Positions 1 to 32,155 of a stretch of 64,000 nucleotides of DNA are shown one piece after another; within the stretch, counting starts at the first letter, position 1; each line of letters begins with the position of its first letter. The stretch is taken from assembly GCA_004764695.1 (NCBI GenBank), contig SMSO01000037.1, forward strand, positions 3,076,747 through 3,140,746. Reading direction: 5' to 3'. Under the pieces are notes generated by a model. The model saw only the letters and a program-made list of their open reading frames with translations, made no database searches and was not told the DNA's origin. Source of the stretch: Schizochytrium sp. TIO01. Lineage: Eukaryota > Protista > Bigyra: Labyrinthulomycetes. The position numbers and the translations under genes were made by a program.

Positions 1-743
1 AATCATAATTTCAATTATTAAAGTTACTGGCGAATAGAGAGGGATTCCTTATTTCTTTTAATTGAAAGAAAAACAGGGAAACTTGTTTCTTACTTTCGAT
101 CAATGCTGCGCTTCAGCTTGAAACCATCGATAATGTAACTTTTCTTATTTTTAATATTACAAATACAATCTCAAGATCGTTACATGAAACTTGTGAAACC
201 TTTTCGAGTTTAACGTCTATAAGGTAGTTTTTATAACGAATCTGGGGAGTGGAATAGCTTGAAAGTAGAATGTCGGCATTTAATAATGGTGCTCGCGACA
301 TACTTCGTAGCCAGCGGTCTTGTAAGCCAGAAAGCTTCTAGCTCTGATGAAGACTGAGCAAAATTGCTTACCACCCACCCAGCTTTCGCTTTAAGCTTCA
401 GCTTTGTTTTGTTTTGTCTTCAAGCGGCAACAGCAGTAGTAAGTACTCTATTATACAAATTTATATTGAATGATTGAATGAAAATATGTGGAATTGAGAA
501 TCGCTGGTCAGGCACGTCATACCTCGAACTGCACTCGCGACGAGGTCCGAGTTGCTGTTCTTTGATCTGCGACGCGGCTAAGGTCGTTTCGGACGGTCGT
601 TGTGCTCTATCTCGGGCACATTCTCGGTGCCGTTGTCTTCTGTCTCCAGTGCTGAAGTCGCTCCTCCAGACATTTTACTGGACGGGGCTGCCGTGGTTTA
701 GCTCATCGTGGGGAGCTCCTGATATCCGAACAGAACAGAAATC

Positions 744-3700
744 ATGAGCGACGTAGAAAACCTTCCCAAACCAGAGTCTGATGTAGACACTAAGATTGCT
801 GAGGATAGCAAGCTTCCCCGTGCGTCTGACACTGCTGATCCCGAGGACATGATGGACGAAGAGGATGGCGACGCCTTTCGCCAATTCGTAGACGTAGACA
901 ATGTTCACGAAAGCAATGCCTCTAAAAATGCTCTCTCTGCAGGACAGACCTTCCAGCGACTTCGCGAAAACGTTGTAGGTGCTTTTAGCCCTGTGGAAAC
1001 CCCTTTTGGCGAGAAACCTCTCATTTATGCCGACTGGACCGCCAGCGGTAGAGCCTTCGCCCCACTAGAAACCTACATTCGCGACAAAGTGTACCCCTTC
1101 TATGCTAATACCCACACTTCTACAAGTATTACTGGACTGCAAAGCACATGCTTTCGAACTGAGTCTCGCCAGATTATTCAGCAAGCCGTTAATGCCAACA
1201 CCCGCAAAGATGTGGTGCTTTTCACTGGCACTGGCGCTACAGGAGCTGTGAACAAGCTGGTCTCGGTATTGGGCCTCGATGTCCCTCTTCGTATGGATCA
1301 GCCGACGCAAGCTCGTCCTGTAGTCTTTGTCGGGCCTTTTGAGCATCACAGCAACCTCCTTCCGTGGCGCGAGTCCAATGCGGAGGTTGTCACTGTTCCA
1401 GAGCGTGAGGATGGCTGTGGAATTGATCGGGTTGCTCTCGAGAAACTCTTAAAGACGTACGTAGATCGACCTCTCTTGGTGGGAGCTTTCTCAGCTGGTT
1501 CGAATGTCACTGGAGTTCTCGAGGACGTCGACCGTATCTCAGCGATCCTGCACCGCCACGGAGCTTTAGCATGCTGGGATTATGCTGCTGCCGGCCCGTA
1601 CGCTCGTATTGACATGAACCCTGTTCTTGCTGGAGAAGACCCCGATCGGCCATTTGCCTATAAGGATGCTGTGTTTCTATCTACACACAAATTTGTGGGT
1701 GGCCTGAACACACCTGGTGTTCTTGTCGCTAAAAAGAAGCTTTTCGGTAATGCGGTGCCTGGCGCAGGGAACGTCGGAGGTGGCACTGTCTACTTTGTGC
1801 GCGAGGATGGACACCGCTATATGTCGAACCGTGTTGAGCGCGAGGAAGGTGGTACTCCGGACGTTGTTGGTGCGATTCGTGCGGGCCTTACCTTCCAGCT
1901 CAAGCAGAATGTTGGTTGGGAGAACATTGAGAAACGTGATTGTGAGCTTGGCAAGCGTATTGGATCGAAGCTCGGATCCCATTCAAACCTTGCTTTGCTC
2001 GGTCCTGAGTGGCAAGAAGAAGCCCGTTTGCCAATCGTGTCTTTCTTGGTTCGCCATGAGTCTCGGTTCTTGCACTACAACTTTGTATCTGCTGTATTGA
2101 ACGACGTCTTTGGCATCCAAACCCGTGGTGGCTGCATGTGTGCTGGCCCGTATGCACAGCGCCTCCTTGGAATGTCGCAGGCTTCCGTTGAGGCTGTGGA
2201 GGAGGAACTCCTCCTCAACCCAAAGCATTCTGAATATCTTCGTCCAGGATTCACCCGCTTCAGCCTATCATATTTTGCTAGCGATGCAGAGGTAGACTAC
2301 ATTCTTGATGCTGTTTGCGCCGTAGCTGATCATGCCTGGAAGCTTCTTCCACTGTACCGTTTCAACACCCGAACTGGCGAATGGAAGCACCGCACTCGCT
2401 TCACCAAATTCCCTGGTCGTCTTTGGCTGGACGATGCTAATTTATTGGGCGAGACCTCTTCTGAAGAGAATATTCCTTCAGAAGGCCAAGCTAGCGCACC
2501 TGACTTCACCAAACTCTTTAGCGAGTGTGTTGAGCAAATGCACGCTGCTGTTGCTGAGGCTGAGAAAGAGACAGTTGCAGATCAAACAAAGCTTTTCACC
2601 CCTGAGGCAGCGGTGCTTCGTTGGTTTGTCATGCCTTCCGAGGTGCACAAGGAACTCAATCAAGAAGCTTCTGCCAACGGAGAATCAGCAGCTACTGGTA
2701 GCTTAATGCCTTCTGCAAAAGATACCTCTTCCCCCGCGCAAGAATCTGTGGTCGGTCCTATTGACCCGTACAAATACTGGGCGCAGATCCGGGAGGGTCT
2801 CCCTGTGCAGCCAGCGTCAACAAGCAAGAGCGATGACGGCTTAACAGATGCGGAACGTGCGCGCAAGCGTGCTCCCGAAATGGAACAAGAGCCGGCCAAG
2901 CGTGCCAAGACTGGCAAGAAAGACTTTATCTGTGAAGACAACTCGTGCTTTCGAATTCGTAAAAGTGACAAGTATCCCTTGCGCACAACGGAGGTTATTC
3001 GCAGCGGTCAAGCGCAGCTGATGGAGCAAAACCCTGGTGAGACTATCAAGGTCGTTGATGAAGCAATTGTGCAGGCTGCTCCGCAAAAGATTTTGCGACC
3101 CAAGATCCCCAAGGGTATCTTGAAGAACGTTGGCAAGGCTTTAGCACAGTGGGACATGATCCAGGATGGCGACCGTCTGCTTCTCGGACTTTCTGGCGGT
3201 AAGGACTCTCTAGCTCTGCTTCATGTTTTGCTCCATGTCCAAGCCAAGGCACCGGTCAAATTTGAGCTCGCCGCTTGTACGATTGACCCAATGACTGAGG
3301 CATTTGACCCAAGTCCTCTCATTCCCTATATGGAGTCTTTGGGTGTCAAGTATCATTACATGAAGGAACCTATTTTTGACAAAGCAAAATCTGGCTCCCT
3401 TCGCGGTACTTCAATCTGCAGTTTCTGTGCTCGGATGAAGCGCGGTGCTCTCTATACATGCGCCCGCGAGCATGGCTACAACAAGCTTGTTCTTGCTCAG
3501 CACTTGGATGATCTGGCAGAGACCTTGATGATGGGTCTCTTCCACAATGGTGTGGCACGGTCTATGATGGCCAACTACGAGGAAAAGAAGGGAGATGTTC
3601 GTGTGATTCGCCCTTTGGCCTACGTTCGTGAACATGAAACCAAGGACTTTTCGTATGCTGCCAAGCTTCCTGTAATCAACGAGAACTGCCCCGCTTGCTT

Positions 3701-3944
3701 CGAGGCTCCGCAGGAGCGCCAGCGTGTGAAACGTTTGCTGGCTAAGGAAGAGGCTACTTGCCCAGCTCTCTTTAACAGCTTGCGTAGAGCCCTTGTGCCT
3801 CTTATGGATGCTGATCTCCTGGAGAAGATGGCTGAGGTCACAAAGGAGCGCCAGCAACTGTCCAGTATTCAACAGCGCCGTATCCGTTCAGCAGTACATA
3901 AAGATCAAAAGGTAAAGCAGGACACACCGCCCGAAGAATCATGA
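744..3944 (+). CDS. Cysteine desulfurase-like class-V PLP enzyme fused to a C-terminal TtcA-type tRNA-cytidine(32) 2-sulfurtransferase (PP-loop) domain, 1066 aa
   Basis: N-terminal domain has YADWTASGR, YANTHT, GPFEHHSN, WDYAAAGPY, the PLP-lysine motif STHKF (~1680), GGTPD and the Cys loop RGGCMCAG (~2124). C-terminal domain has the PP-loop LSGGKDS (~3189-3209), CSFCARMKRG (~3417), QHLDDLAET, IRPLAYVRE and NCPAC (~3684), the diagnostic TtcA motif series. The ORF is single and uninterrupted. Confidence 0.92.
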   Translation: MSDVENLPKPESDVDTKIAEDSKLPRASDTADPEDMMDEEDGDAFRQFVDVDNVHESNASKNALSAGQTFQRLRENVVGAFSPVETPFGEKPLIYADWTASGRAFAPLETYIRDKVYPFYANTHTSTSITGLQSTCFRTESRQIIQQAVNANTRKDVVLFTGTGATGAVNKLVSVLGLDVPLRMDQPTQARPVVFVGPFEHHSNLLPWRESNAEVVTVPEREDGCGIDRVALEKLLKTYVDRPLLVGAFSAGSNVTGVLEDVDRISAILHRHGALACWDYAAAGPYARIDMNPVLAGEDPDRPFAYKDAVFLSTHKFVGGLNTPGVLVAKKKLFGNAVPGAGNVGGGTVYFVREDGHRYMSNRVEREEGGTPDVVGAIRAGLTFQLKQNVGWENIEKRDCELGKRIGSKLGSHSNLALLGPEWQEEARLPIVSFLVRHESRFLHYNFVSAVLNDVFGIQTRGGCMCAGPYAQRLLGMSQASVEAVEEELLLNPKHSEYLRPGFTRFSLSYFASDAEVDYILDAVCAVADHAWKLLPLYRFNTRTGEWKHRTRFTKFPGRLWLDDANLLGETSSEENIPSEGQASAPDFTKLFSECVEQMHAAVAEAEKETVADQTKLFTPEAAVLRWFVMPSEVHKELNQEASANGESAATGSLMPSAKDTSSPAQESVVGPIDPYKYWAQIREGLPVQPASTSKSDDGLTDAERARKRAPEMEQEPAKRAKTGKKDFICEDNSCFRIRKSDKYPLRTTEVIRSGQAQLMEQNPGETIKVVDEAIVQAAPQKILRPKIPKGILKNVGKALAQWDMIQDGDRLLLGLSGGKDSLALLHVLLHVQAKAPVKFELAACTIDPMTEAFDPSPLIPYMESLGVKYHYMKEPIFDKAKSGSLRGTSICSFCARMKRGALYTCAREHGYNKLVLAQHLDDLAETLMMGLFHNGVARSMMANYEEKKGDVRVIRPLAYVREHETKDFSYAAKLPVINENCPACFEAPQERQRVKRLLAKEEATCPALFNSLRRALVPLMDADLLEKMAEVTKERQQLSSIQQRRIRSAVHKDQKVKQDTPPEES

Positions 3945-6900
3945 AAAGGGCTAGGACACATAATATTGCACATGTAATAACACCAAATAATTAAAGAGTG
4001 AAATAAGCGCTAGTTTACATGAACTTCAAATTTACAGTTGACTATCATCTAAGATTGCGTGGGGATTAGAAACAAGTCAGTTTCCATATGTTCTGAAGAA
4101 CTTTACTTGCACTACTCTTGATAATCAGAAATTCAACTATAGGACAATCATTTGCTTGTTTAATTCACTATTAATTTTCCAGGTTTTTAGAGATATCATC
4201 TCAACATATTAAGTAAAACTTTTGACTTGAATATAAAAAATGAGACAAATATTCGATTTGCATGAGAGATTTTCAAAGAGCTGCCTAATAGCCGTTCAAA
4301 GTTGATCAAACCTTGGGCAGACAGATGTCAATGAAATTTCCAATGTGTTGCTTCATTTCAAGAGCAGGGAAGTTTGGAAAGCAAGGCAACTGGACACAGT
4401 GGATATATGACAAGTTCTTGTCGACTAGATTCGTCTTTTCTTTCAATGGTTGAACCTTTTCCATCTCTAAATCTGCAAATAAATACTGAACTTCTCTTCT
4501 CATTATCAGCAGTTCCTCTTTCACAAATTCCATATGGTTCCCTCGCCACGTACCTACAGTCCAAGCTAGATGGACAATTTACTGCAACAATTCAGTTTTT
4601 GGGGCCATGGACTGTGTCTCGCGCATGCCAATGTTAATTTGTCCCAGGATTTGTGCAAACTCTGGACGGATAGCGAACTATCAAAAGCGGCCATTAAAAC
4701 CAGCTGCTCCTTTGCTTTGTCTTTTCCCCACATTGCGCATCGCAATTGTTTCTGCCAACCTAGCTTGCTACGGGTTTACATATTGCACACAAAAATCTCA
4801 AAGACCCGAGGCTCCGTTCCTCTCCGTTGAGAATGGACGCCGACTCCCCGTTGATACTTCCTTGTTCTATGAACTAACGTAACCGGACATTGTACAGGTG
4901 TAGACAACCTGCTGACCGCTAAGGAGGTGTACGTGCGGCACCCACACGAGAGGAAGTCCACACAAAGGCTCCTTTGCTAGGGCGTATAACTTGTTGTCGA
5001 GAATCCAGTATGACAGTTGACACTACTTGGACAATATTTACGGGGGGGAGTCTGGGTTTTTCGAGTGTGAGTCTCTTTTCTGGGCAGTCTTTGCATATGG
5101 GGAAGAAGCTACTAAGTGCAAGCTTTGTCGGCACCGTTTTCACCGTTCCTGGCAAAGATGATCACTTTGATCCTGTTACTGCTATGCTACTTTCTTGTGC
5201 AAAATTGTCTCATCGATGGGACCATTCACCGCCTCGTAGCAACATTTCAACTATGGTCCTTAGTAACATTTTTTGTTTAAATATTAAAAAGGAATAAATA
5301 AAATATTATATTTTAATATATATAGGCCTATACGATTTAGAAATATAATAAAAAATATTCTAAAGCTAAGACATTATTCGTTGCTTTCCCAAGTATGTGA
5401 AATGCGGAGCTCGTGGTCCAAGATTATCCGACTCTGCGCCAGCCTGCCAGCTCCTCTACCAAGGCTCTATTGTGCACTATATGCTGGGCCTTTAGTGATC
5501 ACTCAAGGGAATGAGACATTGGACTACCCCCGTGGCCATTATCATGAGGCATGTGTCATGTGGAGTGAGTATGTGATAGATACTATTGGTTTCAACACCT
5601 GCTGGCCTCTTGAATAATTACATCTTCAATTTTGTTTGTTTGTAGTAGGATGAAGTTGTCTCCCATCATTTACTTCTTTTTTAATGAAAACCAAGTCTGT
5701 CTCGAATCGAAGAATAGCGGTCTCACCTCCTTTCCTTTGGATTGCTAGTGTAATGAGATACCTTATCTGTTTTTGGTGTGCCTTGTTTTGCCTCGGTTCG
5801 CTGAGGAGTATGAAAGCAAAAGAAGAAGAAGAAGAAGAATAAAAGAAGAAGAGGATCCCAGGCCTGTCTATGAAGAAGAAGAAGAAGTAGCTCCTACATA
5901 AGAAGAGTTGAACACGGTTCGTTACTGTGAGCAACTCGGCGTGGGTACCCGTGCTTTTGAGTTTCCAAGCTTAATAAGCGTCGACAAATCAGGTATCCAA
6001 GGTTAGCATTCAGCTCTTCCAAATGCCTATGTAATTGGAAACATCATTTGTGCTCCGCCATGCTACCTACCCCATACCGCTGCTACTAATACTAGCTAGC
6101 TAGGCAGAAGAAAGAAGTCCTGTGTGTTAACAGTCTTTCCGTGGCCCACTGTGGGTACGGCTGCTTAGTAGGCGCTTAGGGACTATTTCTGGCTCAGGAG
6201 CACGGCAGTTGACGTACGCGGTTAGAATCGCTTTCGGGTTTGAGCTGCTCCAAAAGATGCTCCATAAGGACCCCGAAAACTTCCTAATCATCGCGTACCC
6301 TTCGCATGCCGTAAACCACGGAGCAACAGCCATCCCAAGTAAGTTTTCAACCCACCCCGAATCGCTCTTCGCGTTCCCAACACCACTAATCGTTCCGAAA
6401 GTCGGAGCCTCCACCTTGGCAGAGAAAGGCCTCTTTATCGTCTTGGAGCCATGTCATTACACCACTTTCGGATTCCACTGAGCGCTCAGCCATTCGAGGA
6501 CCCTTCTGCGCGGACGTATCCTTCTGCTTCCGCCATCAAACGCCATCGTCAGTCAATCTGAAGATATGGTTTCTGTCACAAGTCAATCCGAATTGGAGGC
6601 ATCATAACAGACACTGACGCACTCACTCATGAGAGCAAAACACAAATAAACAGATAAATAGTTAAAATAATTAATTAGCCGTGGCGCTCACTTCTCTCTC
6701 CCATCGAAAACCTGGAGAACCAAGCGTCATCTCGCAAACGAGTCATCGCCGCCCATCGCAAAGATCGCAATGGACCTGAAGGCTTTTCCGGGAGCATCGC
6801 AAGCTCTCGAGCAGAGTCATCCATGCCTCAGCCAACCAACCATCCAACCCAAATCAACTTGCTGTCTTGGGGCCTGGTCCCCGAGTACCAACCCCAATGA

Positions 6901-10822: not shown

Positions 10823-12929
10823 ATGGCTAACTCCAAGGAGATTCACCCCTCTTCGGGCAAGAAGCCTGAAGACGTGGAGATGGCAATGCAAGGTCTGCGT
10901 GACGGCGTTATTGGCGCTTTTAAGCCGGCCCAGACCCCATTTGGTCTCAAGCCTGTGGTCTATGCCGATTGGACTGCCAGTGGTCGTGGATACGGTCCAT
11001 TGGAAGACTACATCCGTAATAAGGTTGTACCGTTTTATGCTAACACACATACGACATCTTCTCTGACGGGTCTTCCAGAGTACTCTCTTTCGTGAAGAGG
11101 CTCGCAAGATTATTGGAGACTCTGTCCACGCGACGAGTGATGATCTCGTCATCTTCACTGGCACTGGTGCGACGGGAGCTGTGAACAAATTGGTTACCCT
11201 CCTTGGACTTGACTTTAGTGGACGTCTGGATATCCGCGAAAGCGCACGCCCAGTTGTCCTGGTTGGACCCTTTGAGCATCATAGTAACCTTCTTCCGTGG
11301 CGTGAATCCAACGCAGAGGTTATCAATGTTCCCGAGCGCAAGAACGGGCCAGGTGCTGATCAAGAAGTTCTTGAACAACTCTTGAAGCAGTACAAGAACC
11401 GCCCTCTGATTGTTGGCTCCTTCTCAGCTGGCTCAAATGTCACGGGTGTTCTTGAGGATGTCAACGGCGTCTCTAGCCTCCTCCATCGCTATGGTGCACT
11501 CGCTTGCTGGGATTACGCTGCTGCTGGCCCGTATGCTCATATCGACATGAACCCGGAGCTTCCGAAGAATGACCCGAACTATGGACTGGCCTACAAGGAT
11601 GCAGCTTTCATTTCTGTACATAAATTTGTTGGCGGCCTCGGCACTCCAGGTGTTTTGGTAGTCAAGAAGAAGCATTGCACTACTGTTGTTCCTCACGCTG
11701 GAAACATTGGTGGTGGCACTGTGGCCTACGTTCGTGAAGACGGCCAACTTTATCTTCATAATGCCATTGAACGCGAAGAAGGTGGTACTCCGGACATTGT
11801 CGGCGCGATTCGCGCAGGTCTAACCTTTAAACTCAAGGAATCAGTTGGTTGGGAGAACATTGAAAAACGAGAAGTGGAGCTGGGTCATCTGGTGAACTCC
11901 AAGCTGGGTGCACATCCCAAAATTTCTCTGCTTGGGCCGAAATGGGGCCAAGGCCCTCGCCTGTCGATTGTGACCTTTGTTATTCGCCACGGCAATAGAT
12001 TTCTGCATCATAACTTTGTCTCAGCTGTGTTAAATGACATTTTCGGCATTCAAACACGTGGTGGGTGCATGTGCGCTGGTATCTACGCACGGCGTGTGCT
12101 GGGCATTGATTACAAATCGCTGCTTGCCATGGAGACAGAAATGCTCAAGCAACCTGAGATTGCAAGCTTCATTAAGTTTGGTTTCACTCGATTCAGCCTG
12201 TCGTACTTTGCCAGCGAAGAAGAGGTGAACTTCATCCTTGACGCTGTTCTTGCCGTGGCTGATCATGCCTGGAAGCTCCTTCCCTTGTACAGGTATAACA
12301 CTCACACTGGTGAGTGGAAACACAAATCTCTGAGTAATGAGACCTTGGACCAACTTTGGCTCAAGGACGCAGAGCTCTTTGATGCACAAGGCCAAAAGCA
12401 GCCTTTGGATACTGTGGATTTGCTTCAGAGAGGTCCGACGCCGGACTTTGATCACCTATTGGCCCAAGGAATCGAGGACATGGTCAAAGCTGCAGAATCG
12501 TCCAAGGTTGAGGTACTTGAAGACCAAACCAAATCATTTACTCATGAAACCAACAATATGCGCTGGTTTGTCTTGCCCTCGGAAGTGTATTCTCAGATTT
12601 GCGAAGACCGTGAGGCAGCTTTGACTTCGGAGACATTTGGTCCAATCGACCCCTCGCGCTATGAATTACTCAGAGCCACCGAAATGCCTCACCAGTATCA
12701 GCAAGACATCGAGACTATCTCTGTGGAATCTATGTCGGTTTCGTCGGATATCAGCTCTGATAGCCCCAACATGCGCAATCTGTCATCCGACGGTTTTCAC
12801 AAACCGGCCGCAGATGAGCTGAAGAAGAAAACCATTTCAAAGAAGAAATCCTCCGGAAGCAGATTCTTTGGATGGCTTACTCAACTCCGTAAGCGTGAAA
12901 CTCAGCTTGCGATTCAAGTCAGAGCTTAA
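10823..12929 (+). CDS. Cysteine desulfurase-like class-V PLP enzyme, paralogue 2 (no TtcA domain), interrupted by a single +1 C at 11075-11076; ~701 aa when repaired
   Basis: ORF 10784-11095 (first ATG 10823) and ORF 11181-12929 are both colinear with the 744 gene. Removing one C from GGT CTT CCA GAG gives GLQSTLFREEARKIIGDSV...FTGTGATGAVNK. 2107 nt minus 1 is divisible by 3. Motifs SVHKF and RGGCMCAG are intact. Could be an assembly error, a recent pseudogene or recoding. Confidence 0.85.
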
Positions 12930-26593: not shown

Positions 26594-28862
26594 ATGATGA
26601 GCCCTGTCTTTGAAGATTTTGCCTTGGAGAAGTTCTCGGCAGCCTTTGAGGAAAAAGAGGATGCTCAGCATGAAGAGGATGCGGCAACCATTGTTGATGA
26701 CATTGAGGATGACGACCACCTCGAGGTCCTTCTTGAGGAAGTAGATCCCGCCTTCGAGTCAGAAGAAATCAGCAAGCCGGAAAATGATGCTCTTCGTCGC
26801 CTGCGTGAGGGCGTCGTTGGCGCTTTCTTCCCTGCTCAGACCCCTTTCGGAGAGAAACCTGTCGTTTACGCAGACTGGACTGCAAGTGGTCGCGGGTTTG
26901 CACCCCTTGAAGAATTCGTGAGCAACAAGGTCGTGCCTTTCTACGCCAACACTCACACTACATCCTCTCTTACAGGACTGCAAAGCACACTCTTCCGTGA
27001 GGAAGGTCGTCAGATTATCCAAGACGCAGTCAACGCCAAAAAAGACACTGACCTTGTCATCTTCACAGGTACTGGTGCCACTGGTGCAGTAAACAAGTTT
27101 GCCACTCTGCTGGGCCTTGAGTTTAACTCTAGTAGTGACGGCATCGAGGTTTCTCGCCCAGTCGTTTTTGTTGGCCCTTTCGAGCACCATAGTAACATCT
27201 TGCCCTGGCGCGAGTCCAACGCCGAGGTTGTCAATGTCCCTGAGCGTAAAGATGGACGTGGAGTTGATCAGAATGCTCTTGCGCAGCTTCTCAAGCTGTA
27301 CCAGGACCGCCCCTTGCTTATTGGGTCGTTCTCTGCAGGATCAAACGTTACTGGAATCCTTGAGGACGTCAATGGAGTCTCTGCTGTACTTCACCGTCAC
27401 GGAGCCCTCGCATGTTGGGACTACGCGGCTGCAGGCCCATATGCCCAGATTGACATGAACCCGGAACCTTCCCAAGGATGACCCCAACCATGGTCTGGCC
27501 TACAAGGATGCAGTCTTTCTCTCTGTCCACAAATTTGTTGGTGGTATCAGCACCCCTGGCGTACTCATCGTCAAGCAGAAGCTTTTGGCATGCGCAATGC
27601 CTGGAGCTGGCAGCATTGGAGGTGGAACTGTCTTTTTCGTGCGCGAGGATGGCCATCGCTACCTCTCGAACCTTGTCGAGCGTGAGGAAGGTGGTACTCC
27701 TGATGTTGTCGGTGCCATTCGAGCAGGACTCACTTTTCAACTTAAGCAAACTGTAGGATGCGATACCATTAAGAAACGGGATTGTGAACTTGGTGCGCTT
27801 GTCGCCGCCAAGCTTAGCTCACACCCAAAGATCATGCTGCTTGGCCCCGAGTGGCGTTATGAGGCGCGGCTTCCAATTGTAGCTTTTGTCATTCGCCACG
27901 GATCCCGCCTCTTGCACTACAACTTTGTGTCAGCTGTCATGAATGATGTTTTCGGTATCCAAACGCGTGGCGGCTGCATGTGTGCTGGCATCTATACTCG
28001 CCGTCTACTTGGCGTCTCGTACTCCTCACTGAACGCTATCGAGACTGAGATGGTTGATAACCGTGAGCTTGCTGAATTTATCAAGCCCGGCTTTACCCGT
28101 CTGAGCCTCTCATACTTCGCCACTGAAGACGAGGTCAACTACATTCTCGATGCCGTCCGTGCAGTCGCTGACCACGCCTGGAAGCTTCTGCCTTTGTACA
28201 GATATAACACACGCACTGGAGAGTGGAAGCACAAGACCCGCTTTGCCGAAAACCCCACCCGTCTCTGGTTGAGAGATTCTAACCTGCTAAGTGGTGATAA
28301 CAAAGACAAATTCGCCGGAGTCAACACCGAGAAATCTGCCTCCAATGTATACCCTAAGCCTGACTTTAGCAAGCTGCTGGAACAAAGCATTGCCCAAATT
28401 CATGCTGCTGCTGAAGAAGCAAAGGCAGAGCAACTTAGTGATCAGACCCAGATCTTTCAGGGCCCGTCTGCTCCCCTCCGCTGGTTTGTCATGCCTTCCG
28501 AGGTCCACAGCCAAGTATGCTCTGATTGCCCTGTAGCCACGGCACCTGAAATGCAAGGTCCTGTTAACCCTAGCAAATACTGGGTGAACGTTAACGATCT
28601 TCCTCGCCAATACAGTAGTCTTGACGATGTATCCGTAGAGTCTAAATCAACTTCTTCAGAAGACTCCTACCGTGGCCCGAAGCCACCAGCAGGGCTTCGC
28701 GTCGATACTTCAACCAACACCAACAATAAAAACAAGATCATTTCGAACTCCTCCAAAGCGCGCACTGGAACTTCCCCTAAGCGAATCATCTGGAACATCT
28801 TGCAGAAGCACGTGATTAGGTCTGAGTCGAGACTCGCGAGCCCGAAACAGAAGTCGCCATAG
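26594..28862 (+). CDS. Cysteine desulfurase-like class-V PLP enzyme, paralogue 3 (no TtcA domain), interrupted by a single +1 C at 27467-27468; ~755 aa when repaired
   Basis: ORFs 26594-27481 and 27585-28862 are colinear with the paralogues. Removing one C from GAA CCT TCC CAA GGA TGA gives MNPELPKDDPNHGLAYKDAVFLSVHKF, matching paralogue 2 MNPELPKNDPNYGLAYKD. 2269 nt minus 1 is divisible by 3. It has an acidic N-terminal extension like the 744 gene. Confidence 0.85.
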
Positions 28863-29950: not shown

Positions 29951-32155
29951 TTAGGGAGGAGCAAGCGAGATTGAGATTGATTGAATTTTCACCGGAATGA
30001 GAGGCTTATCATGGGCATCGACCTTCACCTGCTCAATCTGTTTGACAGCCTCCATACCTCTCACAACACGGCCAAAAATAGTATGCTTTCCATCGAGCCA
30101 TGGCGTCTCCTTCGTTGTGATGAAGAATTGACTACCGTTGGTGTTTGGTCCTGCATTTGCCATAGATAGGGTAAATGGACGATCGTGACGAAGCCTTTTG
30201 GTATTGATCTCGTCTGAAAAGGTTCCACCCCAAATAGACTCGCCACCAGTCCCGTTGCCCTTGGGATCTCCACCTTGTATCATAAAGTCGCGAATAACAC
30301 GGTGAAATGTAAGGTTGTCATAGTATCCACGCTTAGCATGAGTTGAAAAGTTTTCGACTGTCAAAGGTGCATCATCCGGAAACAGTTCAATCACAACATC
30401 ACCCATTGAGGTGTGAAGAGTAGCAGCTCGAGGGAGAATCTGAGTAACAAGGTTTTGCTCACCTGCCATATTTTCTAGAACGTTCGCGTCTCCCGACAGG
30501 TTTGTGGGTTTCTCGTTGAATATATCGCGTCCTGAGCTTGAGTGAGTTGTGATCGCGTCGTCATCTCCTTCAGGCTCACGTCGAGTGAATAGATAAAATC
30601 GTTGCTTGTTGAACGCAGCACACACAATAACAGGTTCTACAGAAAGAACACGGCTTCTGTTTTGCAGAGCGGATTTGTCAGCACCATGCAAGGCATGTTG
30701 CATCTGATAATCACGTTCTGGAGAACCTTGATACAGTGCAAGCGCAGTGAAGCGCTCAGAGCTTTCGAGGCGCCCTAGAACTCGCGTTGTCACACCTGTC
30801 TCCACATTGATGATCTTAATACCCTCCAACGTTGGCAGAACAATGAAGAGGCCTGACTCATCAAAGACGGCAACAGAAGGCGGAGCTTCTTTTGCCCTCA
30901 CTTGATCAATGTACTTTTTCTCCATAGCAAGACGTCGACCCATATCGACAGGGTCAATGCCCTCCGCATCAGGGCTGGCCTTGGAAAATGCATCAGGTAA
31001 CACCAGCTTTAGCTTTCCTGAGGCAAACCGTATCACTGAAACCTCCCCATTTGCACAGCTCAAGACAAAATATTTTCCTTGTGGGTCTGCGTGAATACCA
31101 AGAGCGTAGGTCTTGCTTTTGCAAAGCTGAAATAAATCAGTTTCAATCTTTCGTGAAAATTTCACAGTTCCAGGGGCAATTGAAGATGATTTCTCAGGAA
31201 AACGAAATTCGGATACATCTCCAGATGATCCGTTCGTCCAATACTCAATCATCCCCTTTTCGTCTACGCTCACGACGCAGTGGCGCTCAGGAAAATAACA
31301 CATGCATGTTACGGGTGCAAAATGCTGTTTAATCTGAGCAAGTGGTTTCGCGCCTTCCGCAGCCTCGTTATCAAAGATTGAGATTTCGCCTGAATCCTTG
31401 TGACCAGCCGCGATCAATTGGCGGCTTGAGCCTGTCGTTTGAGGATGACTCCGAAGCCACACGGCAGGTCCAGGGACGAAATCAAGGGTGATGATGTTGA
31501 TCATGTCAAAACCCTCCACATCAAACACTTTTATATTCCTATCCAGACCAGCGCTACATAGTCTTTTTCCATCAGGGCTGGTACAAAGAGCTGTAAGTGG
31601 TGCCGCATGAGCTTGGTACGTCTTCACAAACTCAACCTTACCTGGCATGATCTTCCAGAATCGTACTTGGCCGTCTGCGCTACCAGTCATAATAAATGCG
31701 CATGACATTGAGACTGCAGTATGCGTGACCTGCGTTTTGTGCATGTAGCTTTTCTCGTATAGCTCTGCACAAGGAAGCCTATCTAAGTACAGCTTTTCTA
31801 GCGCTGGGTCTACGTTTTTGGCAACACGTCGTCGCTTTTTGCCTCGAAGAGAACCACCAGCATTCTTGTTATCAACATCAGCACTTCTACTGAGCTGCAC
31901 CTCTTCGATGTTATCTGAATTTCCAGCAGGCAACTGTGTTCCTTGCAACGATCGTTTCTCTCCCTGTTGCGAAGAGCTCTGCTTCTCCCCAGAATTGCTT
32001 TCTGCAGGCAGCTTTGGTTGCGGGCCCTCGTCCTCTCCATCTCCATCGTCTGCACTACCGTTCGATCCTACAGGAGGAGGTTTGGTGGGGGGTGGGAGCG
32101 GGAGGGGTCCTTCATCGTCATCACTGCTTTCAGGATCCTCGCGTTTGGCGCTCAT
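29951..32155 (-). CDS. PPWD1: Peptidyl-prolyl isomerase domain and WD40 repeat protein (PPWD1/CYP71-like cyclophilin), 734 aa
   Basis: LPCAELYEKSYMH followed by WD repeats (TGSADGQVRFWK, SAGLDRNIKVFD, GMIEYW), the linker RDIFNEKP, and a C-terminal cyclophilin domain (FHRVIRDFMIQGGDPKGNGTGGESIWG, SMANAGPNTNGSQFFIT, WLDGKHTIFGRV). Confidence 0.95.
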   Translation of the reverse strand: MSAKREDPESSDDDEGPLPLPPPTKPPPVGSNGSADDGDGEDEGPQPKLPAESNSGEKQSSSQQGEKRSLQGTQLPAGNSDNIEEVQLSRSADVDNKNAGGSLRGKKRRRVAKNVDPALEKLYLDRLPCAELYEKSYMHKTQVTHTAVSMSCAFIMTGSADGQVRFWKIMPGKVEFVKTYQAHAAPLTALCTSPDGKRLCSAGLDRNIKVFDVEGFDMINIITLDFVPGPAVWLRSHPQTTGSSRQLIAAGHKDSGEISIFDNEAAEGAKPLAQIKQHFAPVTCMCYFPERHCVVSVDEKGMIEYWTNGSSGDVSEFRFPEKSSSIAPGTVKFSRKIETDLFQLCKSKTYALGIHADPQGKYFVLSCANGEVSVIRFASGKLKLVLPDAFSKASPDAEGIDPVDMGRRLAMEKKYIDQVRAKEAPPSVAVFDESGLFIVLPTLEGIKIINVETGVTTRVLGRLESSERFTALALYQGSPERDYQMQHALHGADKSALQNRSRVLSVEPVIVCAAFNKQRFYLFTRREPEGDDDAITTHSSSGRDIFNEKPTNLSGDANVLENMAGEQNLVTQILPRAATLHTSMGDVVIELFPDDAPLTVENFSTHAKRGYYDNLTFHRVIRDFMIQGGDPKGNGTGGESIWGGTFSDEINTKRLRHDRPFTLSMANAGPNTNGSQFFITTKETPWLDGKHTIFGRVVRGMEAVKQIEQVKVDAHDKPLIPVKIQSISISLAPP

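What the first reader, a model, noticed from the sequence alone, without database searches (positions are those of the whole stretch)
744..3944. Eukaryotic cysteine desulfurase-TtcA fusion: a candidate one-polypeptide tRNA thiolation machine
Seen: one ORF joins a class-V PLP domain (STHKF lysine, RGGCMCAG Cys loop) to a full TtcA-like domain (SGGKDS, CSFC, CPAC). Established: bacterial TtcA is a [4Fe-4S] PP-loop enzyme that makes s2C32 in tRNA and depends on a separate cysteine desulfurase (IscS) for sulfur. The standard eukaryotic cytosolic tRNA thiolation is s2U34 by Ncs6/Ncs2-Urm1, not s2C32. This domain lacks the flanking zinc-finger motifs of Ncs6/TtuA, so it is TtcA-type. Inference: this eukaryote may make s2C (or thiolate another RNA or small molecule) using a built-in sulfur donor. 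The fusion would also suggest a function for the poorly characterised RGGCxCAG desulfurase subfamily. I cannot tell from the sequence how widespread this architecture already is in databases.
Basis: partly seen in the sequence, partly recalled or inferred. Interest (0 to 1): 0.85.

Follow-up and report, generated by a model that had tools for sequence, protein, structure and literature searches.

The report
Cysteine desulfurase–TtcA fusion tRNA thiolase
This thraustochytrid gene joins a sulfur-releasing enzyme to a bacterial-type tRNA 2-thiocytidine synthase; the gene is real and transcribed, but the same fusion occurs across eukaryotes and a 2026 preprint already linked it to s2C32 in a sea slug, so it is a new member of a little-studied known family.

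Summary
Window 744-3944 (+) is one uninterrupted 1066-aa ORF with a SufS-type class-V desulfurase (PLP Lys316, RGGC464MC466AG) and a TtcA-type PP-loop domain (SGGKDS 817-822, C892SFC895, C982PAC985). In four runs from four studies, one transcript-like contig spans both domains. The C-domain scores 215 bits on the TtcA model, against 39-61 bits for NcsA, TtuA and TilS, and has no zinc-finger flanks. It belongs to a short-TtcA clade about 60% identical to standalone bacterial proteins. The architecture is not rare. At least 186 two-domain proteins were retrieved, all N-to-C, from stramenopiles, alveolates, Amoebozoa, Rhodelphis, a fungus, choanoflagellates and animals. A bioRxiv preprint (28 Sep 2026) reports s2C32 in Aplysia tRNA-Lys(UUU) and names this fusion as the likely enzyme, without genetics or enzymology. 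New here: Cys466 aligns with the SufS persulfide cysteine; the fusion is ancestral and standalone paralogues (two in this window) derive from it; bacterial homologues are not linked to TtcA; Ncs6/Ncs2/Urm1 were not detected in this genome. Best reading: a cytosolic s2C32 synthase with a tethered sulfur donor that still needs outside Fe-S cluster supply. The scan's index lists only this stretch and the paralogue cluster, nothing on other DNA.

The parts
512..4151 (+). Approximate transcript extent: 5' ends of contigs at 512-531, 3' ends between 3975 and 4662; 5' UTR about 215-230 nt
   Evidence: one contig per run in 4 runs from 4 studies, no joints (no intron), no coverage of 1-511. The runs are only guessed to be RNA.
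744..3944 (+). Coding sequence of the 1066-aa desulfurase-TtcA fusion protein (the end coordinate includes the stop codon)
   Evidence: An almost identical protein, P0001 (99.7% identity), was recovered from other assemblies.
744..917 (+). Acidic, poorly conserved, disordered N-terminal tail (aa 1-58)
   Evidence: pLDDT below 50 for aa 1-43 and 52-58; conservation 0.02-0.12.
921..2453 (+). Type II (SufS/CsdA-like) class-V PLP cysteine desulfurase module, aa about 60-570, including a family-specific C-terminal extension (aa about 480-570)
   Evidence: SufS 8d8s, E 6.9e-22; Foldseek SufS, target TM-score 0.82-0.89; pLDDT mostly above 85.
1689..1691 (+). Lys316, the PLP Schiff-base lysine (S-T-H-K-F)
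   Evidence: Aligns with the SufS 'SGHK' lysine. Invariant in 38 diverse fusions.
2124..2147 (+). RGGCMCAG loop (aa 461-468). Cys466 is the predicted persulfide-forming cysteine; Cys464 is a second invariant Cys.
   Evidence: 'RGGCMCAGP' aligns with SufS 'RAGHHCAQP', placing Cys466 on the SufS catalytic Cys. Both Cys are 100% conserved in 186 fusions.
2487..2693 (+). Confidently folded helical add-on (aa 582-650) with the conserved 'LRWF..P.E' island (Trp627 invariant). It belongs to the desulfurase family, not to the linker.
   Evidence: pLDDT 81-97. The same motif is present in standalone paralogues B and C and in the bacterial homologues.
2694..3086 (+). Poorly conserved, mostly low-confidence tether (aa 651-781) between the two modules
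   Evidence: pLDDT below 50 for 651-665, 692-695 and 710-781; conservation 0.02-0.22.
3087..3851 (+). TtcA-type PP-loop ATP pyrophosphatase / [4Fe-4S] thiolase domain (aa 782-1036), followed by a helical C-terminal tail running to the stop
   Evidence: NF007972, 215 bits, aa 779-1036; 35% identity to E. coli TtcA, E 3e-50; 57-62% identity to short bacterial TtcA.
3192..3209 (+). PP-loop SGGKDS (aa 817-822), the ATP-binding and adenylation motif
   Evidence: Invariant in 38 diverse fusions. Aligns with E. coli TtcA SGGKDS.
3417..3428 (+). C892-S-F-C895, predicted [4Fe-4S] ligands 1 and 2
   Evidence: Aligns with E. coli CSLC (Cys122/Cys125), which are essential cluster ligands. 99% conserved.
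3687..3698 (+). C982-P-A-C985. Cys985 is the predicted third cluster ligand; Cys982 matches the dispensable Cys of E. coli.
   Evidence: Aligns with E. coli CNLC. The paper calls these Cys219 (dispensable) and Cys222 (essential). 98% conserved.
10823..12926 (+). Standalone desulfurase paralogue B (701 aa when intact, no TtcA domain). The window sequence has a 1-nt frame offset at about 11073/11074.
   Evidence: P0241 is 99.7-100% identical across the break; sister to fusion A.
26594..28859 (+). Standalone desulfurase paralogue C (755 aa when intact, no TtcA domain). The window sequence has a 1-nt frame offset at about 27463/27465.
   Evidence: P0068 is 99.6% identical across the break..

Best explanation
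The gene encodes a cytosolic, bifunctional tRNA cytidine-32 2-sulfurtransferase. The N-terminal SufS-type PLP domain (Lys316) takes sulfur from L-cysteine and holds it as a persulfide on Cys466. The C-terminal TtcA domain binds a [4Fe-4S] cluster through Cys892, Cys895 and Cys985, leaving one iron free. It uses ATP at the SGGKDS PP-loop to adenylate the O2 of C32 in a tRNA. The sulfur, carried on the free iron as hydrosulfide or persulfide, then displaces AMP to give s2C32. A flexible tether of roughly 70-130 residues keeps donor and acceptor together. Shown here: the domain identities, the conserved catalytic residues, co-transcription, one orthologous family across eukaryotes, and the TtcA-clade placement. 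Inferred: the product (s2C32), direct transfer between the two domains, cytosolic location, and the tRNA substrates. Nuclear tRNA-Lys(UUU) in this genome has C32/A38, as does the Aplysia tRNA that carries s2C32. The cluster itself must still come from the cell's Fe-S assembly machinery, so the protein is not fully self-sufficient.
For: Domain calls and scores. TtcA 215 bits against TilS_N 61, NcsA 44 and TtuA 39. The same score pattern is seen in standalone short bacterial 'TtcA' proteins (215-224 bits). 35% identity (E 3e-50) to the experimentally characterised E. coli TtcA, with PP-loop and cluster Cys aligned. Those Cys were shown to be essential, and a three-Cys cluster with a free iron site that accepts persulfide sulfur was proposed (PMC4081106). 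57-62% identity to short bacterial TtcA. All fusions fall in one clade nested among short bacterial TtcAs (SH-aLRT 94). The N-domain is SufS-like by sequence and by fold (target TM-score 0.82-0.89), with Cys466 on the SufS catalytic Cys. Lys316, Cys464/466, SGGKDS, CxxC and CPAC are invariant from protists to animals. A single transcript-like contig spans both domains in 4 studies. The model shows two folded modules with a disordered tether. An orthologous fusion is the only TtcA homologue in Aplysia, where s2C32 was mapped by mass spectrometry on tRNA-Lys(UUU). This genome's nuclear tRNA-Lys(UUU) has the loop CUUUUAA.
Against: No biochemical or genetic test exists for any member of the fusion family; the Aplysia link is correlative. 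The C-domain scores below the NCBIfam TtcA equivalog cutoff (215 against 272) and sits in a short-TtcA clade far from E. coli TtcA (very long branch), and I found no experimental test of that clade's product. Type II desulfurases normally need a dedicated acceptor protein (SufE, SufU or CsdE). The domain-docking prediction gave no verdict. This genome appears to lack Ncs6/Ncs2/Urm1, which leaves room for a different or broader target. s2C has not been measured in any stramenopile.
Confidence: 0.65

Rival explanations
1. Same chemistry, different or broader RNA target. In this organism the fusion thiolates U34 (replacing the apparently missing Ncs6/Ncs2/Urm1 pathway) or another pyrimidine position, instead of or in addition to C32.
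For: PF01171, NcsA, TIGR00269, zn-ribbon_14, CTU2 and Urm1 models all fail to find the canonical pathway in a 37-contig, 64-Mb assembly, while positive controls of similar size ring (Elp3-type Radical_SAM_C and MnmA). TtcA, TtuA and Ncs6 share fold and mechanism. The Hondaea orthologue is auto-annotated as 'Cytoplasmic tRNA 2-thiolation protein 1'.
Against: The window protein is an unremarkable, short-branched orthologue of fusions in animals. Animals are known, from general knowledge, to possess CTU1/CTU2/URM1, and Aplysia makes both mcm5s2U34 and s2C32. The score profile is TtcA, not Ncs6. Six-frame searches can miss intron-split or divergent genes, and the CTU2 and Urm1 models had poor controls.
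Confidence: 0.12
2. The two halves work largely independently. The desulfurase module is a general cytosolic sulfur donor (for Moco, Fe-S repair or other acceptors), or the protein is cleaved in the tether, and the TtcA module gets its sulfur elsewhere. The fusion would then only co-regulate expression.
For: The tether is long, disordered and unconserved. The preprint raises possible post-translational cleavage. Standalone copies of the desulfurase arose repeatedly and are retained, showing that the module can function without a fused TtcA. The bacterial homologues are standalone and unlinked to TtcA.
Against: The N-to-C fusion has been kept in all 186 two-domain proteins retrieved, across eukaryotic supergroups. 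The two domain trees are broadly congruent. Such persistence usually reflects functional coupling.
Confidence: 0.12
3. The substrate is not tRNA: a nucleotide or small-molecule thiolation, or DNA/RNA backbone phosphorothioation in the manner of DndA (desulfurase) plus DndC (PP-loop Fe-S protein).
For: The pairing of a desulfurase with a PP-loop [4Fe-4S] ATPase is also the logic of DndA/DndC. There are weak DndA-model hits on the N-domains of relatives (26-36 bits).
Against: The C-domain's best and dominant match is TtcA over its whole length. No DndC-type or other PP-loop family model scored above TilS, NcsA or TtuA. DndA hits are far below cutoff (480 bits) and weaker than the SufS hits.
Confidence: 0.04

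Closest known systems
Aplysia californica 'IscS-TtcA' fused protein LOC101861551 and its mollusc orthologues (bioRxiv 10.64898/2026.09.27.754811)
   Same: Same architecture (CsdA-type desulfurase, long unconserved linker, TtcA-like domain) and the same motifs (PLP Lys, two conserved Cys two residues apart, SGGKDS, CSFC, CPAC). The window protein falls in the same family as Octopus, Penaeus, Cimex and Trichoplax fusions.
   Different: Thraustochytrid orthologue: intronless, 1066 aa against 1177 aa, with a shorter tether. No tRNA mass-spectrometry data exist for this organism. The preprint compared the domain with IscS (type I) and could not name the catalytic Cys; alignment with SufS places it at Cys466 here.
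Escherichia coli / Salmonella TtcA (tRNA cytosine(32) 2-sulfurtransferase)
   Same: PP-loop SGGKDS, a central CxxC plus a later CxxC whose second Cys completes a three-Cys [4Fe-4S] site, and no zinc fingers. 35% identity over 247 aa.
   Different: E. coli TtcA is a standalone 311-aa protein fed by a separate IscS. It scores 514 bits on NF007972 against 215 here. The window domain belongs to a distinct short-TtcA clade.
Short standalone bacterial 'TtcA' proteins (about 245-270 aa; Thiothrix, Aquificaceae and others)
   Same: 57-62% identity to the window's C-domain, and the same sub-cutoff NF007972 scores of 215-224 bits. They form the basal grade next to the eukaryotic clade.
   Different: They are not fused, and the product of this clade is, as far as I found, untested.
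SufS / CsdA type II cysteine desulfurases
   Same: Same fold (target TM-score 0.82-0.89). The PLP Lys, the HHxN motif and the catalytic Cys in an 'R-x-G-x-x-C-A-x-P' loop all align.
   Different: Only about 22% identity and far below the equivalog cutoffs (113 against 475 bits). There is an extra invariant Cys464, a roughly 170-aa C-terminal extension with the RWF..P.E helical module, and no SufE/SufU/CsdE partner is evident.
Ncs6/CTU1-Ncs2/CTU2-Urm1 (eukaryotic s2U34) and TtuA/NcsA
   Same: Same PP-loop/[Fe-S] superfamily and the same adenylation-thiolation chemistry. These are the nearest solved structures (6scy and 5gha, E about 1e-9).
   Different: No N- or C-terminal zinc fingers. The sulfur comes from a fused desulfurase, not a thiocarboxylated ubiquitin-like carrier. 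Scores are only 39-44 bits on the TtuA and NcsA models.
Other natural desulfurase fusions (ABA3/MOCOS NifS-like plus MOSC; desulfurase-rhodanese chimeras)
   Same: The principle of tethering a class-V desulfurase to its sulfur acceptor (abstract of bioRxiv 10.1101/2020.03.25.008375; general knowledge for ABA3).
   Different: Here the acceptor is an Fe-S PP-loop RNA thiolase, not a MOSC or rhodanese domain.

Membership tests
TtcA family (tRNA C32 2-sulfurtransferase) | PP-loop SGGxDS ATP-binding motif | tested here: met
   SGGKDS at aa 817-822, invariant, aligned to the E. coli TtcA motif.
TtcA family (tRNA C32 2-sulfurtransferase) | Three Cys ligands for a [4Fe-4S] cluster: the central CxxC plus the second Cys of a later CxxC | tested here: met
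   C892, C895 and C985 align with the essential E. coli Cys and are 98-99% conserved. Actual cluster binding was not tested.
TtcA family (tRNA C32 2-sulfurtransferase) | No flanking zinc-finger CxxC pairs (group I of Jager et al. 2004) | tested here: met
   No conserved additional CxxC pairs around the domain.
TtcA family (tRNA C32 2-sulfurtransferase) | Reaches the NCBIfam equivalog cutoff for TtcA (NF007972, 272 bits) | tested here: not met
   215 bits. E. coli TtcA scores 514, while short bacterial 'TtcA' proteins score 215-224. It is therefore TtcA-like (short clade), not an E. coli-type equivalog by this criterion.
TtcA family (tRNA C32 2-sulfurtransferase) | Produces s2C32 in tRNA | not testable with these tools
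   There is only correlative support from the Aplysia orthologue.
Eukaryotic CsdA-TtcA fusion family (as in Aplysia LOC101861551) | One polypeptide with an N-terminal class-V desulfurase, a variable linker and a C-terminal TtcA-like domain carrying the C..CSFC..CPAC pattern | tested here: met
   (186 of 186 in N-to-C order). Mollusc (Octopus), crustacean, insect and placozoan members align along the full length.
Type II (SufS/CsdA) cysteine desulfurases | Class-V fold, PLP Lys, and a catalytic Cys on a short C-terminal loop | tested here: met
   Lys316 and Cys466 align and are invariant. Desulfurase activity was not tested.
Type II (SufS/CsdA) cysteine desulfurases | Reaches the SufS or CsdA family cutoffs | tested here: not met
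   SufS subfamily 113.5 against 475 bits; CsdA 50.6 against 494 bits. It is a separate subfamily with a roughly 170-aa extension.
Ncs6/CTU1 / TtuA / NcsA | Zinc-finger flanks and a family-model score | tested here: not met
   NcsA 43.7 against 500 bits and TtuA 38.9 against 450 bits; no zinc fingers.
TilS (lysidine synthetase) | TilS N-domain cutoff (93.6 bits) plus the TilS substrate-binding C-domains | tested here: not met
   60.9 bits. A separate gene in this genome (L001) does reach it, at 107 bits.

The most novel reading that the evidence does not exclude
In this thraustochytrid, which shows no detectable Ncs6/CTU1, Ncs2/CTU2 or Urm1, the desulfurase-TtcA fusion is the only cytosolic PP-loop tRNA thiolase. 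It may have taken over, or always have carried, all cytosolic 2-thiolation (s2C32 and possibly s2U34), with a directly fused persulfide donor in place of the ubiquitin-like Urm1 sulfur relay. More broadly, the fusion dates back to early eukaryotes, which would make s2C32 an overlooked ancestral eukaryotic tRNA modification.
Probability: 0.1. Interest if true: 0.8.

Novelty: new member of a known kind. Interest (0 to 1): 0.45.

Why it matters
Until September 2026, s2C32 and TtcA were regarded as prokaryotic only. The fusion family is the sole candidate enzyme for the newly reported eukaryotic s2C32, and none of its members has been tested. This thraustochytrid copy is intronless and expressed, and its relatives can be grown in culture. 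That makes it a convenient member for the first knockout and enzymology, and for asking whether a persulfide can pass directly from a SufS-type desulfurase to the free iron of a [4Fe-4S] thiolase. The wide but patchy distribution (SAR, Amoebozoa, Rhodelphis, fungi, choanoflagellates, many invertebrates) implies an ancient eukaryotic gene that the standard model organisms have hidden. The apparent absence of the Urm1 pathway in this genome, if confirmed, would be a second notable point.

Tried and rejected
(2) Bacterial operon hypothesis: 80 bacterial loci with the standalone ~570-aa RGGCSCAG desulfurase have no TtcA-like sequence within 8 kb, and no neighbour family is shared by more than 11 of 80 loci. 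Rejected: the fusion does not mirror a bacterial operon. (3) complex prediction of the N-module (aa 60-600) against the C-module (aa 775-1040) gave no verdict (ipSAE 0.00), which is neither support nor evidence against. (4) Identity as Ncs6/TtuA, TilS or a DndA/DndC-like system: rejected on scores and motifs. (5) Introns in paralogues B and C: rejected. The breaks are 1-nt frame offsets relative to intact proteins from other assemblies. (6) The long 'C-only' proteins in the tree looked like different architectures, but Pfam shows Aminotran_5 in all six tested. (7) One Pfam call exceeded the size limit and was re-sent in part. (8) Searches for CTU2 and Urm1 had weak or absent control signal and are inconclusive on their own.


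Full report
OBSERVATION. Window 744-3944 (+) is a single uninterrupted ORF of 1066 aa. Pfam finds Aminotran_5 (aa 94-519, E 1.7e-31) and the PP-loop family ATP_bind_3 (aa 812-977, E 5.3e-15). NCBIfam gives TtcA (NF007972) as the dominant C-terminal match: 215 bits over aa 779-1036, against TilS_N 61, NcsA 44 and TtuA 39. The best N-terminal match is the SufS subfamily, at 113 bits.

TRANSCRIPTION. 24 public runs from 11 studies hold the gene. I laid four runs from four studies on window 1-6000. In each, one contig starts at 512-531, ends at 3975-4662 and covers the whole ORF, with no joints. Nothing lies on 1-511. The shared 5' boundary and the lack of flanking DNA are what transcript assemblies give. 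The runs are only guessed to be RNA, so this is good but not formal evidence that one intronless mRNA spans both domains.

THE TtcA DOMAIN. It is 35% identical (E 3e-50) to E. coli TtcA. SGGKDS, CSFC (C892/C895) and CPAC (C982/C985) align with the E. coli PP-loop, CSLC and CNLC. Bouvier et al. 2014 (PMC4081106) showed that E. coli TtcA is a dimer with a [4Fe-4S] cluster held by three Cys: the central CxxC pair and the second Cys of the later pair. The first Cys of the later pair is dispensable. They proposed that persulfide sulfur from IscS binds the free iron and attacks the adenylated cytidine. The six Cys mutated in that paper map in order onto the six Cys of the aligned E. coli sequence, although the numbering is offset for some. 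The window's equivalents of the ligands are C892, C895 and C985.

The domain is much closer (57-62% identity) to standalone bacterial proteins of 245-270 aa annotated as TtcA, from Thiothrix, Aquificaceae and others. Those proteins also score 215-224 bits, below the 272-bit equivalog cutoff, while E. coli TtcA scores 514. In a 117-row tree rooted on the very long-branched E. coli TtcA, these short bacterial proteins form a basal grade. Every fusion lies in one 108-row clade (SH-aLRT 94). There are no zinc-finger flanks. The PDB holds no TtcA structure; the nearest solved relatives are NcsA and TtuA, at E about 1e-9. So the domain is TtcA-type, of a short clade whose product has not, as far as I found, been tested directly.

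THE DESULFURASE DOMAIN. By sequence and by predicted fold (Foldseek target TM-score 0.82-0.89 to SufS) it is a type II, SufS/CsdA-like enzyme. The phmmer alignment puts STHK316 on the SufS PLP lysine. It puts 'RGGCMC466AGP' on SufS 'RAGHHCAQP', so Cys466 is the predicted persulfide cysteine, and Cys464 is an additional invariant Cys. Both are 100% conserved in 186 fusions. The family has a C-terminal extension of about 170 aa, which includes a confidently folded helical module (aa 582-650) with an invariant Trp627 in 'LRWF..P.E'. That motif is also present in the standalone paralogues and in the bacterial homologues. Much of what looks like linker therefore belongs to the desulfurase. The true tether is roughly aa 651-781 and has low confidence and low conservation.

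HOW WIDESPREAD. A full-length search returned more than 583 hits, and nearly all of the top 120 carry both Pfam domains. A search of 1.84 billion cluster representatives with the C-domain alone gave 451 hits at E<1e-30, and most of the best 150 are proteins of 800-1660 aa with the TtcA domain at the C-terminus. Of the proteins fetched, 186 have both domains, always in N-to-C order, with a median length of 1068 aa. Six long proteins that first appeared to lack the N-domain do carry Aminotran_5.

Named members are as follows.
- Labyrinthulomycetes: Hondaea (75% identity) and Mucochytrium.
- Many oomycetes.
- Ochrophytes: Pylaiella, Tribonema, Chrysoparadoxa and Paraphysomonas.
- Alveolates: Perkinsus, Vitrella and Stentor.
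- Amoebozoa: Vermistella and Polysphondylium.
- Rhodelphis.
- A fungus: Hyaloraphidium.
- A choanoflagellate: Choanoeca.
- Animals: Trichoplax, Octopus, Penaeus and Cimex.
Several entries are already auto-named 'tRNA 2-thiocytidine biosynthesis protein TtcA'.

LITERATURE. A 2017 review lists s2C32 and TtcA for bacteria and archaea only. A bioRxiv preprint of 28 Sep 2026 (10.64898/2026.09.27.754811) maps s2C32 on Aplysia tRNA-Lys(UUU), calls it the first eukaryotic s2C, and identifies a 1177-aa 'IscS-TtcA' fusion. That fusion is conserved in 28 mollusc species and has hits in other animals. It carries SGGKDS and the C-CSFC-CPAC pattern, plus conserved Cys448/Cys450. The authors compared the domain with IscS and could not assign the catalytic Cys, and they did no genetics or enzymology. 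Two further literature searches found no other report.

ORIGIN AND PARALOGUES. Standalone homologues of the desulfurase (about 570-590 aa, about 50% identity) are common in Myxococcota, Actinomycetota, Chloroflexota and other bacteria. None of 80 such loci has a TtcA within 8 kb, and no neighbour is conserved, so the fusion is a eukaryotic invention and not a fused operon. This genome has two further copies of the desulfurase, both in this window: B at 10823-12926 and C at 26594-28859. Each shows a 1-nt frame offset relative to intact 701-aa and 755-aa proteins from other assemblies.

In a tree of the desulfurase domain, eukaryotes (100*) separate from bacteria (100*), and the standalone eukaryotic copies nest within lineage-specific fusion clades. 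B+C group with the window and Hondaea fusions (99*). The Peronosporales standalone copies group with the Phytophthora and Albugo fusions (98*). The Aphanomyces standalone copy groups with the Saprolegnia fusion (98*). The fusion is therefore ancestral, and standalone copies arose repeatedly by partial duplication with loss of the TtcA part. This agrees with the scan's separate note on the paralogue cluster. The two domain trees are broadly congruent, with animal/choanoflagellate/amoebozoan, alveolate and stramenopile groups in each, which points to one old fusion event inherited as a unit.

CONTEXT IN THIS GENOME. The only other PP-loop (PF01171) gene is TilS-type. Models for NcsA/Ncs6, TIGR00269, zn-ribbon_14, CTU2 and Urm1 find nothing except the fusion itself. 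An Elp3-type Radical_SAM_C domain and MnmA are found easily. This is a credible but unproven absence of the Urm1 pathway, and it is the basis of the novel case. A nuclear tRNA-Lys(UUU) gene has the anticodon loop CUUUUAA (C32/A38), the context that is modified in Aplysia. The other neighbours in the window are unrelated.

MECHANISM AND LIMITS. The most likely mechanism is this. PLP-dependent desulfuration of cysteine forms a Cys466 persulfide. The sulfur is delivered to the free iron of the TtcA-domain cluster. C32 is adenylated with ATP and the sulfur substitutes for AMP, giving s2C32. The domain identities and residues are shown here; the product, direct intramolecular transfer, the substrates and the cytosolic location are inferred. 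The protein cannot be a complete 'machine', because cluster insertion and reducing equivalents must come from elsewhere.

VERDICT. This is a real, expressed, well-conserved gene: a new (thraustochytrid) member of a recently described but biochemically untested eukaryotic desulfurase-TtcA family. It is of moderate interest, mainly as a tractable test case and for the side observation on the missing Urm1 pathway.

Noticed in passing
window 10823-12926 and 26594-28859 (+): Two standalone paralogues of the RGGCMCAG desulfurase lie within 28 kb of the fusion. Each has a 1-nt frame offset (about 11073/11074 and about 27463/27465) relative to intact 701-aa (P0241) and 755-aa (P0068) proteins from other assemblies. 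This is either an assembly indel or a strain difference, not an intron. They are sister to the fusion's N-domain.
   Followed up: yes
whole genome G000: No Ncs6/CTU1, Ncs2/CTU2 or Urm1 is detectable by six family models, while Elp3-type and MnmA controls are found. This thraustochytrid may lack the canonical cytosolic s2U34 pathway.
   Followed up: partly
L001 (G000:C31:3419614-3423192), ORF 670-2955: A 761-aa protein with a TilS-type N-domain (107 bits, above the cutoff): a lysidine-synthetase-like gene in a plastid-less heterotroph, presumably mitochondrial.
   Followed up: partly
P0101 (Hyaloraphidium curvatum) in the trees: The only fungal fusion groups with Labyrinthulomycetes in both domain trees (SH-aLRT about 94). 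This could be horizontal transfer, contamination or a long-branch effect.
   Followed up: no
P0055, P0060; P0433; Perkinsus, Vitrella and Stentor entries: Variant architectures exist: some fusions carry added thioredoxin-family domains, and the alveolate versions carry an N-terminal C2H2 (dsRNA-binding type) zinc finger.
   Followed up: no
Phytophthora nicotianae F441_17267 / F441_17268: In Phytophthora a standalone desulfurase paralogue has the locus tag next to that of the fusion, mirroring the tandem arrangement in this window although the duplications are lineage-specific.
   Followed up: partly
G000:C30:9381547-9393155, C35:886110-887841, C8:29573-30669: The genome has long tandem arrays of identical tRNA genes, for example tRNA-Val(GAC) repeats spaced about 165-210 bp apart.
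   Followed up: no
window 29951-32155 (-): A 734-aa WD40 plus cyclophilin (PPIase) protein. It is unrelated to sulfur metabolism.
   Followed up: partly
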